A stretch of DNA of 64,000 nucleotides from Trichoplax adhaerens (lineage: Eukaryota > Animalia > Placozoa). The position numbers and the translations under genes were made by a program. The stretch lies in contig NW_002060957.1 of NCBI RefSeq assembly GCF_000150275.1, positions 1,042,445-1,106,444 on the forward strand, read 5' to 3'. Of the stretch, positions 1 to 15,990 are shown one piece after another (within the stretch, counting starts at the first letter, position 1; each line of letters starts with the position of its first letter). The notes beneath the pieces are model-generated. The model was given only the letters and a program-made list of their open reading frames with translations, was not told the origin of the DNA and did no database searches.

Positions 1-16
1 TACGCCTAAATAGTAA

Positions 17-520
17 ATGGCTTGTAGAGCAATTCTTTGTTCGCAAAGATGATTGCTGGTTAAAATAAAATCACTTGGTTTATCCTAATAGATGTAGAAA
101 TAATCAACGTGTTAATGAATGGCTTCTAGAGCAATTCTTTGCTGCCAAAGATGACTACCAGTTAAAATAAAATCACTTGGTTTATCCTAATAGATGTAGA
201 AATAATCAACGTGTAAATGAATGGCTTCTAGAGTAATTCTTTGTTCTCAAAGATGACTAGTGGTTAAAATAAAATCGCTTGATTTATCCTAATGGATGTA
301 GAAATAATCAACGTGTTAATGAATGGCTTGTAGAGTAATTCTTTGTTGTCAAAGACGACTACTAGTTAAAATAAAATCAATTGGTTTACCCTAATAGATG
401 TAGAAACAATCAACGTGTTAATGAATGTTTTCTAAAGTAATTTCTTAGTTGTCAAAGATGACTACTAGTTAAAATAAAATTACTTGATTTATCCTAACAG
501 ATTTAGAAATAATCAATGCG
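17..520. repeat. Tandem repeat, ~102-bp unit, ~5 copies
   Basis: The unit ATGGCTT(G/C)TAGAG..TTCTTTG..CAAAGATGACT..GTTAAAATAAAATCACTTGGTTTATCCTAATAGATGTAGAAATAATCAACGTGTTAATGA recurs at ~17, 119, 222, 323 and 425. Confidence 0.95.
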
Positions 521-1540: not shown

Positions 1541-3679
1541 ATGCCGGATTCCTGCTGTGTGATAGGATGCAAAAATAGAAGAATAGGAAATCGTCTGAGT
1601 TTTTATCGAATACCGAGAGCATGCACTGCCAAAGAAATTCATCGTCGTCAACTTTGGTTAAAAGCAATCAATCGATCCAATTGGTCTACCAAGAAGATTG
1701 CTAATGCTCGAATATCTAGCCAACATTTTACTACAGGTTTGTTCTCCCAGTGGAAATACTACAATATGCTCAACGCTGTACGCTGGAATAATAACCAGTA
1801 GGTCTGATCAGTTCTGACCTAATATCCGGTGTTAATTAGGGGTTGCATTATTTGGTCTTTCTACTATCTTACTAGGCACAGGTTTATCTTGTCCGTATCA
1901 TGCAGCCTAATTTTAATTGTTGATGATATACAAGGTTATATTGTAAAGGGTATCAGAAGATTTCATAACGATATCCTAACCGTATAGACTACAGTTACAT
2001 GGTCAAACTTGAAGTATCAGCTATACTCGTATAAATAAGAAATTATATCCCAAATTATATCCCACAATAGTTATGAACACGATAAAGTGGATACATGGAT
2101 TTTTTGATTACAACTAAACATCACTTTCTATCGTCGCTTAATTTAATACCGTGTTATCCATGAAATGACTAGCGATTACACTTTCAACTAAAGATATTTT
2201 GCATTATTTCGCCAATTAGATAGTACTATCTCAGCCTAAAGCCATAGAGTAAGGCAAATAACACCTTATAATATGAATTATTATAACATTCAATCTAATT
2301 CTCATTTTGAATCTAATTTATTGCTAGGGAAGAGATCAGATAATCCCGATCATCCAGATTATATTCCATCTATTTTTACATCTAATAAAGAGTTGAATAT
2401 GACCGATCATCAGGAGATTCGTCAATCTGGAGGACTGACTGCTAATTCATCAATCAATCTTGGCAAAGAAACTCACTCCGAGGTTGGAAATAGAGTAATA
2501 AAGATAATAAAAATTATTGACTTTCAAGCTGGAGTACCACAGCAGCAATACCATAGTAGACAAATCGGTGATTGATCTTTCTTACTACTACTTTAATCCA
2601 ATTGTTACATTTTCACTTCCATAAATAATGTCATTAATTTTCTTAGGTATGCAAACGGAAAATAAAATATCTCTTTCTGTAGGAGTACAAACGCAAGACA
2701 CTGATGGAGAATTGGAAACAAACTTAAAGCAAGCATATATAGAATTAAATAACAAAAACGTAATAATAAGTGAACTACGACATGAAATTTTTGAATTAAA
2801 CAGGAAATCAATCTTCTCTTGGCATTCAGTTAAATATAATTTTAAACTGTTTCGATTTCTGACTGGTTTACCCACAATTGAATCTTTTAATTGGCTGTTA
2901 GGGTTAGTTAGTAACCATGCTAAGATCATAAGAAAGACTCTAAGTTCCGAAGATCATTTATTAGCGGTATTAATGAAGCTAAAATTAGGTCTTACGAATG
3001 CTGATATTGCCTATCGTTTTGCAATTGAACCAGTATCTATTTCCTACATTTACAATCATTGGCTTCCTAAGTTAGCAACTGCTGTTGGTCAATTAATTAT
3101 CTGGCCAAATAAGGAAGCAATTGAAGAAATATGCCAGCTTGCTTTAAACGGAATTTTCCAAACTGTGTCGCGGTTATCGACTGTACAGATATTGCAATTG
3201 AAAGACCGAGTAACTTATCGGCTAAAGCTCAAACTTGGTCAAGCTATCGGCATTCGAATACAATAAAATATTTAATCGGCATCACTCCGGCAGGAGCAGT
3301 TAGTTTTTTATCGTCAGGTTGGGGTGGTAAAGTATCCGATAATGAAATTACATTACGATCTGGATTTCTGGAAAAATTAAATCAAAACGATGTTATCCTT
3401 GCTGACAAGGGATTCTTAGTGAAGAAAGAATTGGCTTTAAGAGGCGCTATATTAAAAATTCCTTCCTGCATAAGAGGTAAAAAGCAATTACCAGCAAGAG
3501 AAGTTGATCAGTCAAGGGAATTATGCCATGTTAGAATTCATGTTGAGCGTGTTATTGGTCGACTTAAAAGATTTAAACTATTACAGACTACAATACCTAT
3601 ATCACAAGTGCAGTTATTAGATCATGTTATGATTGCTGTCGCAGGAATAGTCAACATGAACCGCAGCATTATTACCTAG
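1541..3679 (+). pseudogene. THAP-HTH-DDE (HARBI1/ISL2EU-type) transposase, 3 exons, with a 1-nt frameshift at ~3129 (pseudogene or assembly error)
   Basis: Exon 1 1541-1736 (MPDSCCVIGC..FYRIP..RRQLWLKAINR..RISSQHF); exon 2 2328-2567 (KRSDNPDHPDYIPSIF, THAP C-end); exon 3 from 2647 (FRFLTGLP..LSSEDHLLAVLMKLKLGLTNADIAYRF, HTH). Both GT-AG introns are phase 1. After IIWPNKEAIEE the frame shifts into MPACFKRNFPNCVAVIDCTD..LADKGF..RIHVERVIGRLK, with the D, D and E catalytic residues intact. Confidence 0.85.
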
Positions 3680-4059
3680 ATATATACATTGATATCTATT
3701 CCATTAATGGAGTCGAATTCTTAAGCACTCTTACTTTTTACTGCAGTAAAGATTATGTATCACACAATATGAATTTTATTAACCAACTTTTTGGCAATGA
3801 ATTAATTAAGCGAAATACGCATGTAGCTATTAATATAATATAGAACGAGATGCCAGCATAACCAATATATATAAATCGGTGCTAACGCATTTATCTAGAA
3901 AAGTATATATGAAGTGAGGAGGTAGCAATAAATAACAATCATAATCAGAGATAACATTGAACAATTAATAAATTCTTATTGGAAAGAGAAATTTAATATT
4001 TTATAGTAGGGTGCACATGAAGTTGATAACCAAGGTAACAAACACTTCTTTAATTAACA

Positions 4060-4800
4060 AGATTTTCTTACTTGTTTCTATTGAACCTTTTTTGGTAAAA
4101 TAGCACTCTTTATTTACCTGATTTAAAATTATTGCAGGCATTAGCTTTTCAAGTAAAGTTCTTATTTCTTTAAATACTTATTCGACGGATTTTGCTCTCC
4201 AATATTGGCATCTTGAGTCCATATGAAAATAGTTGAAATAATTACACCCATCCACAAACTAGCAGTCATATTTGAATTGGATGTATTTGAAGGTTGATAT
4301 TCAAAGTTACGAACAACTACTTAGGAAGCAGGGATTTTCTTTCTTGCTTTAGACTTGTAATTTCTGATAAAATAGCATTCTTAAATAATAGATTTAAATT
4401 ACTGTAAGTCATGACTTTTCAATAAAGTTATCACTACTGCAAACCTTAATATTATTCCTCCAGCATTAATATTTTATATTCGTATGAAATAAATGATAAT
4501 AGTTTAATTTGTAACAGTTAAAGGTAATCCTTTAGCTTGAAGATAGATAAAGAAGGCAGCGAACACTTGTTCAATTAAGAGGATTTCCTATCTTGCTTTC
4601 GACTTACGATTTCTGGTAAAATAGCATTCTTAAACACTTGATTTAAACTAGGTAATAACTTTTCAATAAATCCATCGTTCCTCCAAACTCTTATTATAAT
4701 TTTATCTCCAGCATTGTTACCTTGTGTCCATATGAAAAAATCACAATAGTCCAACTCGCAAACTAACAGCAATCCTTGAACTTGATAAAAATATGGATGA
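4060..4800 (-). repeat. Degenerate tandem triplication (~250-270 bp period) of the 3' end of the SWIM-YqaJ gene
   Basis: 4580-4800 (GGATTTCCTATCTTGCTTT..GTAAAATAGCATTCTTAAA..GATTTAAA..CTTTTCAATAAA..CTCCAGCATT..TCCATATGAAAA) is echoed at ~4331-4556 and ~4060-4290. Confidence 0.8.
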
Positions 4801-7790
4801 TTCTCTTTCAGTAACTTGCTTTCGGATATTGGGCAATCTTTATCCTTATACCAATTAGTTAAGCCTTCCTTATATTTATAAGGGCAGATAACTTCTAAAG
4901 CACCTTTACCATGACATTCGCAATGGATAATACCATCTGGTGAGGCTGCAAATTGAGGAAATTTAGAATTGATGTGTAGACCTGTCGCTTTAAGCGTAAA
5001 ATTGCCATGACTTTTACGCATGGTAGCTAGGTAGCAATTTAACGCGCTGTCTGTCATTTGCTTACTGTAAATAACTGCTGCACCATCATATTCGAGCTTA
5101 TACTGCATTATACATTTAATTAAAGCTCTATTTGGATTATTTATGGAATGAGCAATGCGATGAAACATGGAAGCGATAATTCGACCAGCACAGTGAACCT
5201 TCCACAAAGGTGATCGCTTGGGGAAGACTGTTACTGCGCATAGCTTATCATAAGAATTTTGCGTATATAATTTTTTATATTCTTCAAAAGCCTGATAGCT
5301 TATTGTTCGAAGATCTCGAGAGTTTAATTTTGCTTTTTCTGGATCGTATAAACTTGTTATCGGCCTTGGAATAGAGCTCCAGTCATGCTGGATAATTCGA
5401 TTACCTTGCGATCCATTAGGAATGCCAAAATGGACTCTATTCGTCGTAAAACTTGTAAAAATAGCAGCATTTGGAGCAGCTACTTTTAAAGCGGTTAGCT
5501 GGATTTCTGATATACCTGCTGCACCAGCTGTTGGATCTGCGTAGCTAATATTCATTTTCGTATCTTTAACACCATCTGTATGGGTGCTGTAAGGTAGTAA
5601 ATCGCTACGCTTAGGTCTCTTAAAGCAAATCTTTTTGAGAGGTCGTGGCGATGTATGCGTTTTAGATTGATTCCAGGTACTTAATTTGCTCGACGATGTA
5701 GTTGTATGAAGTTCCAACTGAAAGTATGCTAGTAATTTGAATAAGACAGCGGCTACATGATCACATGCAGACCCTAAGCTGGTTATACAATAAGGTAAGA
5801 ATTTCAATTTTTTGGTTTAGTTCTCAACAAGGATTTACTTATCGTCGTTACATTATATCGCAAAGAATATGGGAGAGATCAATCGGAGCATGGCTATTAA
5901 CTAATTTTTTCAGCTATTTAACAGTAGCTAAAGCAATTATAAAGAATTATTTTAATATAATATGCTAAAGCTTGTATATTATAGTTTTGTGATGATGTTA
6001 GGGTCCGTGAAATTTGTATAGTTTATCGTGAAGTAATCGAGGTAAAAAAATGATATAATTATATCTTTCTAATTATGCTAGGTTGACATATCAAAATTTT
6101 ACTGTTTATAATTTATAAATGAGATCTGGCGTGGTTTAAAACCTAAAAATAAGGAATATTGGCGTGACTAAAACTGCAATTTAGTTGAAATTTTAATATT
6201 AATCTAGGTATCGTCCACAGCTTTCTTCTTCTTAGAGATTAGAATGTCTCAATATCGTCTACAGTACTAGACAAAATGACTTCATTGCATGGTAACTAGT
6301 ACAAGTTTGCACCAACTGAAGATATTTTAACTTGAAATTTATTCTAATCGCCGTATATTAATTAATTACTGACATAGCTCATGTTTTTAGTTACCCAATT
6401 TTTAGACGGATAAAAATTTATCCTTTCAGATAAAGACTTAAGACATTTTTAGATAATATGCATGGAAGTAAAGCATTACCATTCTGCAACTAGATGGACG
6501 CATATTTACATGATGAATATTTACTTGTCAATGGAATTCGATCCGATCTGGGATCGTCAAGGGCTAAATTATGTAAAAGTCTCCTATATTATTCTCCAGA
6601 AATATCATCGATATCTACGAAACAAGTGATTTACAGTATAGTTTATTCACTGTCATCGCTAGTCGAAATATTGAATATATCTAGAAAACAGTATTCTTGC
6701 TCATTTAAATAATTCTAAAATGGAACTAATCACTGCAGCTAATAATTAATTTGATTGTCGCTAATAGTGCAATGACTGAAAATGATCTTCATTTAGATCA
6801 TAAATTGAGTGAGAAATTATTCTATACCACAGTTGTCCATAGATTTAGTTAGTAATGACTGTAAGGTGGTAGCAATTGGACTAGATAAGCAGCATATATA
6901 CGGCTAATTTAGTTTAATTTCGAGTCTTTTGAAAAGGGGTTTTAAGCTTATGTCGTCACATGTTCTGGAATACAACAGACATACGATGCTGTAGGTACTG
7001 CAGTATCTACTGTCATAAATAAAGACAGAATTTATAAGTAGCGCAAACTAAGCATTTCCGACTCTGTAATAGCTTTTGAAATGAAAATTGTTTGATATTC
7101 CTAACTTTGCAAACTTTCTCGGCAGAAAGAGATAAAAATCGACTAGCAAAATTTCAATCACATTACACCTATACCTAATGTCTATTTCGAAGCACTTATT
7201 AGTATGTAGATAGTAAAACCTGATATAATTACTTACCCGGATTTACAAGTACAATTTGCAGTTAATATTGATCCTGATTTTTTGTTAGTACATATCCAGG
7301 CGTGGTAGAATTCTGCTTTTTTACCTTGCAGTGTACTGGACAGAATCTTTTTATTGATTTAAACAAATTGATGAAATTATTTATACAAAGTAAAGTAGTA
7401 TGCGTAAGCCAGGACAAAAAAGAAAACATTATACGTTAGTACCTTTGATTTCACAAAGCAGAATTGACATTCTACTTCGATGTCATGGTAATAGATGTCC
7501 TGTACATGTCCACAAAGGAAGTAACTATACGCTTTTAGAGATTTGTATGCTTTGACAGTATCTTGCGTAAATTCACTTGTAGTATCTACAAGGTATTTAT
7601 AGATATCAAGCCATGCTACATTAGGTAGCAGGTTGATATCGCGTTTCCAATTCTTTAAGGTAAAAGGATCAGGCAGACGTTCCTCCTTACTTGGAGTTAA
7701 TTTCCGATCATATTGAAACTGTTGACTTATGTCCAAGGATTGATAATAAGAAGATAAGTTAGAGGTAGCTACATCGATAGTACCTGCCAT
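4575..7790 (-). CDS. SWIM zinc finger + YqaJ/lambda-exonuclease-like protein, 553 aa, 3 exons (7790-7443, 7346-7237, 5778-4575)
   Basis: GT-AG junctions give one open frame of 1662 nt. The SWIM motif spans the exon 2/3 junction (ANCTCKSG|LGSACDHVAAVLF). YqaJ motifs: GRIIASMF, GLHINSKFPQFAASPDG, LEVICPY, YFYQVQG..CDFFIWT. The N-terminus has KAYKSLKAYSYFLCGHV, typical of these transposon ORF2 proteins. Confidence 0.88.
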
Positions 7791-9900
7791 TATAGTATTG
7801 ATTTGAGAAATGGGAAAGTATCTTGGCCACGTAATAGTAAATGTAAAACACGACCTTGATATTGTACACGCATCAGTACTTTTGCCCTATCCGAATGAAA
7901 TTATTTTGCTGAGATATTAGATTTTAACGCATTCATATTCCTGCGATTTGCAATTGTTATTTGTTAATTATTGATTTCAATTAATCTTAATATAATTAGA
8001 TGGGGAAATTTTGCGATAAACGCGATTACTCATTAGTTAGTGATTGTATACTAGTCACATGCACTGTAACAAGTGTTAGAATATAGAAAGTTGCCAGAAT
8101 TTAAAACCGCAATATTTTTTTGAGCAGACTTTATTATCAATATCATTACAGTAATGTCCTCCCCTGAGCCATGCCAGGTTCAATTCGATTTTATTGTGAC
8201 ATTGCTACTCTATTCGGAATGGTGCAAAGTCAACTAGCTGCAAGTAAATCATAATAATTAATTAGTCCTTAATCACATCATCCACTGTATTTCTAATTAA
8301 TTCTTTATAGATAGTCTACAAAATGGAAAAAAATTGTAGAAGAGATTCATCTAGTTTTGCAATAAAATGCAGCCGTGTAAAATTCCGGTTAATAGTGATT
8401 TTACACGTTTGAGCTCGATTCACCAATCAGCGACATAAAATAGAACTTTACCTCTAGGCATATTTTATTATCTTATACTATTTCTCCCTAAATAGAAATA
8501 GAGAGATCGATCAAGTTTGTAAGGATGTACTATAATATTTCCCTTTTTGTTTTTGTATATAAGTGATAAATTTACGTTCGCTTGAAATATTAGCAAGATT
8601 ACGCGTATGAGCCTATGAGGTCTAATCATATTGGGAATTTCAATCTCATATGTTTAACTTTTGTCTGTTGCCTTCCTATTAACTTGGAAAATGATCCATC
8701 TAAAGACATCGTTCTCTTTTCCTGTCATTGTCCATAAGCAAACTGTACGAATAAATTAATACGAGTTTAAAATACAGTTATATTATGATTTCTAACTCGC
8801 TAATCGAGAATAATAAAATTATTAATATATAGAGAGTGGCACTTGCATTGGGTTCTATTGGTTCTTTATTAATTAATTATCAACGTATTCACAGATTTTA
8901 TATGAACTGGTCAATTAAGTGATTAATGTTTACAGCGTTGTAATAAAGTTCTAAGATTTATTACCCGAATGGTTACTTGGGGCTGGATATAATACATTGG
9001 TTTATTAATTAATGTGGAATTACAACAGTGATCTGTTATAATTACTAAATTAGCGACAATAAATAATAAGGATTTTAAAATGTTATTGGTTTTAATTTAT
9101 TAATTTACAGTATTTCTAGATTGGTGCAGTTTATCACCTGTATTCATATCATGGCTATGCTACCATAGACAACTAAATTGCATCTAGAAGTCCGTGGTAC
9201 TACCCGTTGGTTCCGTCGTTCGTTATCTGAGTAACTGTACAGAGCAGCAATTGGATTGTATCCATTAGTGGATCATGTTGATCTGCTGTTGGTGGAAGAT
9301 GAGTATCCAATAGGCGGATATGATATAGTTATTGCTGTCAGTGAATTCTGTATTGATGAAGTCAATAACCTGTAAGTTCATGTTTACCGGGTAAAGGGTA
9401 TCGTGAAAAGTAGCGCTTTCCTCTCCAACTACTCTGCCACCCAAAGTATTGTGTCGATTCGGCGTTGGAGTAGATTACAATGATTCACTGTCTATGTTTA
9501 ACCGTAAATCATTCTCTCCGTATCTCGCTTAGTGGCTTGACCTAGCATTTTTACTTTTAGTACAGTTGTCTCTATACTGCCTTACAGCTCTGCCTGTTTA
9601 TTAGGCCACAGTCCCTTTGTAACTTACTGCTACTATGTATAACATATCCATATTGCTGAAAGTAGTCTATAGGTTCAAAAATTCTGATAGTCTATCAGCA
9701 TCTCTATGAAGAAAAGGAACAATTATCCCTATTTCAGCTGTCCTTCAACCGAAATTCGATTGCCTATCACCACCTTCTACACTTTTAATAAGCGCTTGTA
9801 CAAACAGGAAGGTAGAAAAAACTGCGGGCTGCTGTTTACCAAGACGACCACTTCTATCTTCCCTGATGAAGTGGACGTGTCCAATGTCCAACGTCCATAG

Positions 9901-10484: not shown

Positions 10485-15990
<5,506 letters not shown>

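What the first reader, a model, noticed from the sequence alone, without database searches (positions are those of the whole stretch)
4575..7790. Intact spliced SWIM-YqaJ gene with a dismantled nuclease active site: candidate domesticated pseudo-exonuclease
Seen: one open 553-codon frame across three exons with canonical splice sites and a complete SWIM CxC..CxH. Established: lambda-exonuclease/YqaJ enzymes need the PD-(D/E)xK motif plus W...R.GR.TAS and G...E motifs. Here PDG is kept, but ExK reads EVI (ATC codon at 4887-4889), G...E reads YSKQMT, and W...R.GRITAS reads WKVHCAGRIIAS. Adjacent copies of its own 3' end (4060-4556) have decayed heavily, so the locus is old, yet the ORF has no stop. 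Inference: selection keeps a catalytically dead DNA-binding or scaffold protein, analogous to co-opted Harbinger ORF2 partners such as NAIF1 but with a nuclease fold.
Basis: partly seen in the sequence, partly recalled or inferred. Interest (0 to 1): 0.8.

Follow-up and report, generated by a model that had tools for sequence, protein, structure and literature searches.

The report
Placozoan transposon-derived nuclease-dead SWIM-YqaJ gene
A single-copy Trichoplax gene descended from the second gene of an ISL2EU transposon keeps a lambda-exonuclease fold and stays under purifying selection, although it has lost three key catalytic residues and a chromatin-reading finger, so it is probably a non-cutting partner protein rather than an enzyme.

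Summary
A minus-strand gene of three exons and 553 codons (7790-7443, 7346-7237, 5778-4575) has GT-AG introns, a CxC-x7-CxH SWIM motif and a weak YqaJ domain. An annotated Trichoplax sp. H2 protein of 553 aa is 99% identical.

Seven transposon-borne relatives keep W..HRAGRITAS, YGK..E, SPDG, LEIKCP and YYYQVQLQ. The window reads HCAGRIIAS, YSKQMT and LEVICP. An intact three-exon ortholog from another placozoan-like sample (71% identical) shares R>C, G>S, E lost and K>I. Both have also lost the ING-type PHD finger of the relatives.

dN/dS against that ortholog is 0.16 (dS about 1.3). The gene is single-copy with no detectable terminal repeats. Its protein divergence equals that of the neighbouring ACADVL.

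Three things weaken the domestication claim:
- Genuine transposon copies show the same dN/dS (0.14).
- The convergent THAP-HTH-DDE transposase is equally conserved (0.12), and is intact in H2.
- Synteny beyond H2 could not be tested.

Best reading: an immobilised ISL2EU gene pair kept in placozoans, whose second protein is a pseudo-exonuclease. This is a new variant of a known kind. The scan also noted this same stretch as s1-762672.

The parts
7443..7790 (-). Exon 1 (116 codons, ATG at 7790-7788): conserved N-terminal domain that precedes the SWIM finger
   Evidence: Identical in H2, 63% identical in L003, and aligned to the full-length transposon relative P0005.
7347..7442 (-). Intron 1 (96 nt, GT..AG)
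   Evidence: The position is shared with L003 and with the paralog L002.
7237..7346 (-). Exon 2 (36 codons plus 2 nt): carries the first half of the SWIM motif (CTCKSG)
   Evidence: P0001 gives a SWIM match of 18.2 bits at residues 140-167.
5779..7236 (-). Intron 2 (1458 nt, phase 2), which splits the SWIM motif. It is present in L003 (about 990 nt) and absent from the transposon relative L005 and the paralog L002.
4575..5778 (-). Exon 3 (1 nt, 400 codons, stop): second half of the SWIM motif (CDH), a low-confidence linker, and the lambda-exonuclease/YqaJ-fold domain
   Evidence: Pfam YqaJ 24.7 bits. The AF2 model has pLDDT of about 90 over residues 140-400, with lambda exonuclease and LHK-Exo as the top Foldseek matches.
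4887..4889 (-). ATC codon, Ile450, in the position of the catalytic Lys of ExK (LEVICP against LEIKCP)
   Evidence: The same K>I change is in L003/P0002.
5190..5192 (-). Cys349 in the position of the 5'-phosphate-binding Arg (Arg28 in lambda exonuclease). The coordinate is computed from exon-3 residue 196.
   Evidence: PMC7496540 and PMC3239189 for the role of the Arg.
5052..5054 (-). Thr395 in the position of the metal-site Glu (Glu85 in lambda exonuclease; motif YGK..E). The coordinate is computed from exon-3 residue 242.
   Evidence: The LHK-Exo alignment.
4041..4556 (-). Two decayed tandem copies (period about 249 nt) of the last 65-75 codons of the gene, with stops and frameshifts. They are present in H2. 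No self-similarity was found in the 376 nt downstream of the L003 gene.
1541..3679 (+). Convergent partner gene for a THAP, HTH_Tnp_4 and DDE_Tnp_4 transposase. The THAP exon lies at 1541 to about 1738 and the main exon at 2628-3679. H1 has a 1-nt shorter A-run at 3127-3129 that shifts the frame. H2 has an intact 350-codon ORF.

Best explanation
The gene is the second ORF (SWIM, lambda-exonuclease/YqaJ fold) of an ISL2EU-type DNA transposon. It sits with its convergent THAP-HTH-DDE transposase gene as one immobile copy between ATE1 and ACADVL in Trichoplax.

Before Trichoplax split from a second placozoan lineage, the protein lost four things:
- the 5'-phosphate-binding Arg
- the metal-site Glu and its Gly
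- the catalytic Lys
- the whole C-terminal ING-type PHD finger

It also gained an intron. Since then it has evolved under purifying selection at the pace of an ordinary host enzyme.

The inferred mechanism is a nuclease-dead protein. It keeps its N-terminal/SWIM module and the exonuclease fold as a DNA-binding or scaffold surface. It most probably works with the co-retained transposase-derived protein, as NAIF1 does with HARBI1.

Shown here: the anatomy, the homology, the residue losses, their age, the selection and the copy number. Inferred: catalytic death, host function and partnership.
For: - **Homology and layout.** Relatives at 34-40% identity lie in the same convergent arrangement next to THAP/HTH_Tnp_4/DDE_Tnp_4 genes in L005 and L006. 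A shared inverted repeat flanks each of those pairs. The literature defines ISL2EU as a transposase plus a YqaJ ORF2 (PMC4482050, PMC4122938, PMC9179366).
- **Residue loss.** Of 72 columns invariant in seven transposon relatives, 57 are kept. R349C, G391S, E395T/M, K450I and Q489L are lost in both placozoan sequences.
- **Pfam signal.** The YqaJ score falls from 63-68 bits over the full model to 20-25 bits over the C-terminal half.
- **Fold.** The lambda-exonuclease fold is kept.
- **PHD finger.** The relatives carry it (E 1e-18 to ING/Yng PHD). No remnant is found in the window or in L003.
- **Selection.** dN/dS is 0.16 overall and 0.14 in the nuclease domain, with dS 1.27. The raw pN/pS is 0.29.
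- **Rate.** Protein identity of 71% equals that of ACADVL in the same sample (71.3%) and of the transposase (70.5%).
- **Copy number.** The genome holds one copy plus a 26% identical paralog. No terminal repeats exceed shuffles, and the flanks are unique.
- **Locus.** It is the same in H2, in the order ATE1, gene, THAP gene, ACADVL.
Against: - Genuine transposon copies show the same dN/dS (0.14), so selection at the level of the element is not excluded.
- ISL2EU terminal repeats can be as short as 6 bp (PMC4482050), and such repeats would escape my test.
- Synteny is shown only against H2, which is 98.9% identical in DNA.
- The transposase keeps its DDE residues and is intact in H2, so mobility is not ruled out.
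- Single Ala mutants of the Lys, Glu and Arg in LHK-Exo keep 15-30% of activity (PMC3239189).
- There are no expression data, no biochemistry and no evidence of interaction.
Confidence: 0.6

Rival explanations
1. It is still part of a functional low-copy autonomous ISL2EU transposon. Under this reading, ORF2 serves transposition through binding rather than cutting, so the purifying selection acts on the element and not for the host.
For: - Both genes of the pair are conserved with dN/dS 0.11-0.16, the same range as true transposon copies (0.065-0.14).
- The DDE residues are present and the H2 transposase ORF is intact.
- A second, diverged pair in the same genome also combines an intact 483-codon transposase ORF with an eroded nuclease motif (LQLKC, no G...E).
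- Very short terminal repeats cannot be excluded (PMC4482050).
Against: - The genome holds exactly one copy, with no fragments or MITE-like relatives of the flanks.
- No terminal repeats exceed shuffles in two lineages, whereas L006 shows one above all shuffles.
- The H1 transposase carries a frameshift.
- Decayed tandem debris sits between the two genes.
- The protein divergence equals that of a host enzyme.
- An intron was gained and the PHD finger lost before the lineage split.
Confidence: 0.25
2. The protein is still an active nuclease that uses a non-canonical active site, with Asp434 and Glu448 kept and the general base supplied from elsewhere.
For: - SPDG and the Glu of ExK are retained, as are Trp345, Ser356 and the YxYQ motif.
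- LHK-Exo K114A, E68A and R12A are only partly impaired (PMC3239189).
- The fold is well predicted.
Against: - Three functional positions are replaced together, by Cys, Thr and Ile, none of which can do the job.
- Lambda exonuclease K131A is inactive (PMC7496540).
- The motif keeps eroding independently in each lineage (T354I in H1; S356P and S432T in L003).
- The nearby lysines (CPYKYK) are also present in intact relatives, so they are not compensatory novelties.
Confidence: 0.1
3. It is a decaying relic whose frame is open by chance or by youth.
For: Against H2 there are only 7 differences, 5 of them non-synonymous, which is uninformative.
Against: - The 553-codon ORF and both splice sites are intact in a lineage separated by dS of about 1.3, with dN/dS 0.16.
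- The adjacent duplicated 3' ends are full of stops and indels.
- The chance probability of the open frame is about 4e-14.
Confidence: 0.03

Closest known systems
ORF2 (YqaJ exonuclease-domain protein) of ISL2EU transposons of the PHIS/Harbinger-like superfamily
   Same: - Homologous over the N-terminal domain, the SWIM motif, the linker and the nuclease fold (34-40% identity).
- The same convergent pairing with a THAP-HTH-DDE_Tnp_4 transposase (PMC4482050).
   Different: - Single copy with no detectable terminal repeats.
- The catalytic Lys, metal-site Glu and phosphate-binding Arg are replaced.
- The ING-type PHD finger is missing.
- There is an extra intron.
- It is conserved between placozoan lineages at the rate of a host gene.
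HARBI1/NAIF1 in vertebrates, and HDP1/HDP2 and ALP1/ALP2 in Arabidopsis: co-opted pairs from Harbinger elements
   Same: Both genes of a two-gene PHIS-superfamily transposon are retained together under purifying selection. The accessory protein would act as a non-catalytic partner. This is an analogy; the examples are cited in PMC9179366.
   Different: - The accessory protein here has a nuclease fold with a SWIM motif, not a Myb/SANT domain.
- The two genes still lie side by side in the transposon's own arrangement.
- Host function, interaction and deep synteny are not shown.
Lambda exonuclease and LHK-Exo (PD-(D/E)xK 5'-3' alkaline exonucleases; PDB 1AVQ, 3SM4, 3SYY)
   Same: - The fold matches (Foldseek E about 2e-8, TM 0.65-0.73 on the target).
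- The family profile aligns motif by motif with LHK-Exo.
- Asp and Glu of PD...ExK are kept.
   Different: - Sequence identity is only 17-18%.
- The equivalents of Lys131, Glu85 and Arg28 are Ile, Thr and Cys.
- The domain is fused to a SWIM module.
- Trimer formation is unknown.

Membership tests
YqaJ / lambda-exonuclease family (PF09588) | Profile match above the curated cut-off | tested here: met
   24.7 bits against a cut-off of 22, but only profile positions 78-147. L003 scores 20.1 bits, below the cut-off. Transposon relatives score 63-68 bits.
YqaJ / lambda-exonuclease family (PF09588) | Lambda-exonuclease-type PD-(D/E)xK fold | tested here: met
   The AF2 domain has pLDDT of about 90. 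The top Foldseek hits are 3sm4, 3syy and 1avq, at E 2e-8 to 1e-7.
YqaJ / lambda-exonuclease family (PF09588) | Catalytic triad Asp...Glu-x-Lys | tested here: not met
   Asp434 and Glu448 are present, but the Lys is replaced by Ile450 (LEVICP). The same holds in P0002 (LELICP).
YqaJ / lambda-exonuclease family (PF09588) | Metal-site Glu of the G...E motif, and the 5'-phosphate-binding Arg of W...R.G.ITAS | tested here: not met
   YSKQMT (G>S, E>T) and WKVHCAGRIIAS (R>C, T>I). The roles of these residues come from PMC7496540 and PMC3239189.
ISL2EU transposon ORF2 | Homology to YqaJ ORF2 proteins encoded next to a THAP/HTH/DDE_Tnp_4 transposase | tested here: met
   The window's own DDE ORF is 61% identical to those of L005 and L006.
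ISL2EU transposon ORF2 | Element bounded by terminal inverted repeats (usually starting with GG) and an AT target duplication | tested here: inconclusive
   No inverted repeat exceeds shuffles (score 24-26 against a median of 23-27). Repeats as short as 6 bp are known (PMC4482050) and would not be detectable.
ISL2EU transposon ORF2 | Repeated in the genome | tested here: not met
   One copy plus one paralog at 26% identity. There are three DDE matches in all, one of them broken.
SWIM zinc finger (PF04434) | CxCxnCxH signature and profile match | tested here: inconclusive
   The CxC-x7-CxH signature is present across the exon 2/3 junction. The profile score on P0001 is 18.2 bits, below the cut-off of 19.6.
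Domesticated transposon gene (operational criteria) | Single copy, purifying selection, and orthologs at the same locus in distant species | tested here: inconclusive
   Single copy and dN/dS 0.16 are met. The same locus is shown only in the near-identical H2. The distant ortholog lies on a 3.6-kb contig without neighbours. The transposon control has the same dN/dS.
Domesticated transposon gene (operational criteria) | Expression as a spliced host mRNA | not testable with these tools
   No RNA-seq was available. The only indirect support is the H2 gene model of 553 aa.

The most novel reading that the evidence does not exclude
Placozoans have co-opted a whole ISL2EU transposon as a two-gene host module. 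The transposase-derived THAP-DDE protein and a nuclease-dead SWIM-exonuclease-fold partner would work together. This would be the first domesticated ISL2EU pair, and the first case in which a transposon's accessory nuclease became a pseudoenzyme. A second, independently acquired pair in the same genome shows parallel erosion of the nuclease motif.
Probability: 0.45. Interest if true: 0.65.

Novelty: new variant of a known kind. Interest (0 to 1): 0.5.

Why it matters
The function of the ISL2EU second ORF is unknown (PMC4482050). This natural variant keeps the fold, the SWIM module and most invariant positions, and lacks specifically the catalytic and 5'-phosphate residues and the PHD finger. 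That pattern suggests the protein has a role that does not need cutting, which is testable.

If the pair is a host module, it extends the HARBI1/NAIF1 type of paired co-option to another branch of the superfamily and to an early-branching animal. It would also add a pseudo-nuclease to the list of transposon-derived host proteins.

In the library searched I found no report of a domesticated ISL2EU or YqaJ gene. That is absence within that library only.

Tried and rejected
- **Linking contigs in the distant placozoan (SRR30664517).** I compared the contigs carrying the gene (L003), the transposase (L012) and ACADVL (L014). There was no overlap and no shared end words, so synteny stays open.
- **A possible empty-site allele.** A second 99% match to the upstream flank (contig C1126) turned out to be a redundant haplotype contig that simply ends at window 8243.
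- **PHD remnants.** I found none downstream of the stop, either in the window or in L003.
- **Terminal repeats.** Nothing exceeded shuffles, and the GATGGGCA core of the L005/L006 repeat is absent from the first 10 kb of the window, L003 and L012.
- **dN/dS against H2.** There are only 7 differences, so it is uninformative.
- **Frameshift in the transposase.** I first took it as evidence of decay. H2 lacks it (one more A in the run), so it may be recent or an assembly error.
- **Joined spliced protein.** Never submitted. Exons were searched by reference, and the database protein P0001 served as proxy.
Full report
**What is there.** The window belongs to a 105.6-Mb, 33% G+C genome. Its proteins match Trichoplax adhaerens at 100% (TRIADDRAFT_30874). 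It is not human sequence.

On the minus strand lies a gene of three exons: 7790-7443, 7346-7237 and 5778-4575. It has canonical GT-AG introns of 96 and 1458 nt and 553 codons. A 553-aa annotated protein of Trichoplax sp. H2 (P0001, hypothetical protein TrispH2_002946) is 99% identical. Its gene spans the same 3216 nt.

The SWIM signature CxC-x7-CxH straddles intron 2. On P0001 the Pfam SWIM model scores 18.2 bits, just under its cut-off of 19.6. Exon 3 scores 24.7 bits on Pfam YqaJ (cut-off 22), but only over the C-terminal half of the model.

An AlphaFold model of exon 3 has pLDDT of about 90 over residues 140-400. Its best structural matches are lambda exonuclease (3sm4, 1avq) and LHK-Exo (3syy) at E 2e-8 to 1e-7.

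Exons were searched by reference, and P0001 served as the database proxy.

**The motifs.** Seven relatives at 34-40% identity (P0003-P0009) read W.LHRAGRITAS, (Y/H)GK..E..A, ASPDG, LEIKCP and YYYQVQLQ. The profile aligns motif by motif to LHK-Exo.

The window protein reads:
- WKVHCAGRIIAS
- YSKQMTDSA
- ASPDG
- LEVICP (ATC at 4889-4887)
- YFYQVQGLL

In lambda exonuclease the corresponding residues have known roles:
- Arg28 and Trp24 form the 5'-phosphate pocket.
- Glu85, Asp119 and Lys131 form the active site.
- K131A is used as the inactive mutant (PMC7496540).

In LHK-Exo, by contrast, single alanine mutants of the Lys, Glu and Arg retain 15%, 30% and 14% of the rate (PMC3239189). Three simultaneous replacements by Cys, Thr and Ile still make an active exonuclease unlikely.

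Of 72 alignment columns invariant in the seven relatives, the window keeps 57. Those lost in both placozoan sequences include R349C, G391S, E395T/M, K450I and Q489L. The loss therefore falls on functional positions within an otherwise preserved domain.

**Where it comes from.** Two relatives were fetched with context (L005, and L006 from GCA_024449705.1). Both show the gene followed by a convergent THAP, HTH_Tnp_4 and DDE_Tnp_4 transposase. In both, a shared inverted repeat (GCGCGCA..GATGGGCAAAA) brackets the pair.

This is the published architecture of autonomous ISL2EU elements: a transposase plus a YqaJ ORF2, an AT target duplication, and terminal repeats of 6-259 bp (PMC4482050, PMC4122938, PMC9179366).

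The window has the same layout:
- a THAP exon at 1541
- a main exon at 2628-3679 with DDE_Tnp_4 (E 1e-45), 61% identical to the transposases of L005 and L006
- the two genes convergent on each other

The relatives also end in an ING-type PHD finger (E about 1e-18 to Yng1/2 and ING1-5). The placozoan proteins stop just before it, and no remnant is detectable downstream.

**Age and selection.** A Logan contig from run SRR30664517 (L003) carries an intact ortholog. It has the same three exons, the same intron positions and phases, the same stop and 71% identity.

That sample is a placozoan relative. It also holds an ACADVL that is 71% identical to the Trichoplax gene, against 53-56% for other animals. 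Its G+C is 34-37%.

The ortholog shares R>C, G>S, loss of the Glu, K>I, Q>L, the PHD loss and intron 2. All of these therefore predate the split. Each lineage has eroded the first motif further, with T354I here and S356P and S432T there.

Nei-Gojobori results for the gene:
- dN/dS is 0.160 (bootstrap 0.108-0.213) at dS 1.27.
- The nuclease domain alone gives 0.143.
- The uncorrected pN/pS is 0.29.

The adjacent tandem copies of the 3' end serve as an internal contrast. They are 70-73% identical to the real end, with 12-14 gaps and many stops.

**Controls that limit the inference.**
- The true transposon copies L005 and L006 give dN/dS 0.141 for ORF2 and 0.065 for the transposase. The ratio therefore does not separate host-level from element-level selection.
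- The partner transposase is conserved as well. Orthologs exist in SRR30664517 (L012) and in a metagenome (L013). They have 350 and 346 codons, and dN/dS is 0.11-0.12.
- The frameshift I saw in the window's transposase is a run of three A (3127-3129) where H2 has four. The H2 ORF is intact.
- H2 is 98.9% identical in DNA across the whole region, so its shared locus (ATE1, gene, THAP gene, ACADVL) says little.
- The three SRR30664517 contigs do not overlap, so deep synteny is unresolved.

**What favours a host gene.**
- The genome holds one copy, plus a 26% identical paralog.
- There are only three DDE matches of this type in the genome.
- The flanks are unique, apart from a redundant haplotype contig.
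- No terminal repeat exceeds shuffles, either in the window or between the upstream regions of L003 and L012.
- Protein divergence is 71% identity with dN 0.20, equal to the neighbouring ACADVL (71.3%, dN 0.19).
- An intron was gained inside the SWIM motif.
- Debris of a tandem duplication lies between the two genes.

**Verdict.** A nuclease-fold protein that lost its catalytic residues long ago has been kept by selection. Whether the beneficiary is the host or a very quiet transposon remains open.

My estimates are about 0.6 for an immobilised, host-maintained pair with a pseudo-exonuclease partner, 0.25 for a still-functional low-copy element, and 0.1 for a non-canonical active nuclease.

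This is a new variant of a known kind, the ISL2EU ORF2. I found no report of a domesticated ISL2EU or YqaJ gene in the searched library.

The scan's sibling note s1-762672 describes the same stretch as an ISL2EU-type pair. My results agree with it.

Noticed in passing
window 3123-3133: The transposase main exon is frameshifted in this assembly by an A-run of three (3127-3129). Trichoplax sp. H2 has four A and an intact 350-codon ORF (L004:14115-15164, minus strand). This is either a very recent inactivation in H1 or an assembly error.
   Followed up: partly
L002 (G000:C1407:1130905-1135086) and L008: A second ISL2EU-like pair in the same genome. It has a two-exon SWIM-YqaJ gene (26-28% identical to the window's) convergent with an intact 483-codon DDE_Tnp_4 ORF. 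Its nuclease motifs are also eroded (LQLKC, ITDS, no G...E). A broken DDE fragment with two TGA stops lies 2 kb further on (C1407:1137200-1137599).
   Followed up: partly
P0003-P0009; L005 and L006: Transposon-borne ORF2 proteins of this ISL2EU branch end in an ING-type PHD finger (E about 1e-18 to Yng1/Yng2/ING1-5). This suggests the element reads H3K4me3 chromatin. I did not find this described in the ISL2EU papers I read.
   Followed up: partly
L005:9413-9434 and 13245-13266; L006:1031-1058 and 5053-5080: A shared inverted repeat (GCGCGCA..GATGGGCAAAA) brackets the two-gene unit in both transposon relatives. It is a candidate terminal or subterminal repeat of that family.
   Followed up: no
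window about 9155-9157: Both Trichoplax sp. H2 (L004) and the redundant contig C1126 (L016) carry about 1 kb of extra sequence at this point compared with the window. This is an insertion/deletion polymorphism between ATE1 and the gene.
   Followed up: no
window 14-516: Offset self-matches at 88-89% identity against the H2 locus indicate a tandem repeat array with a period of roughly 100 nt upstream of the THAP gene.
   Followed up: no
upstream of the window's start; L004:18724-20529: ACADVL is a small gene family in Trichoplax. TRIADDRAFT_30874 is 100% identical, 31810 is 89%, 20833 is 68% and 31757 is 58%. Orthology of the benchmark gene in the distant placozoan therefore carries a caveat.
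   Followed up: no
window 5779-7236: Intron 2 (1458 nt; about 990 nt in L003) splits the SWIM motif. It is absent from the transposon relative L005 and from the paralog L002, so it is an intron gained in the placozoan lineage.
   Followed up: partly
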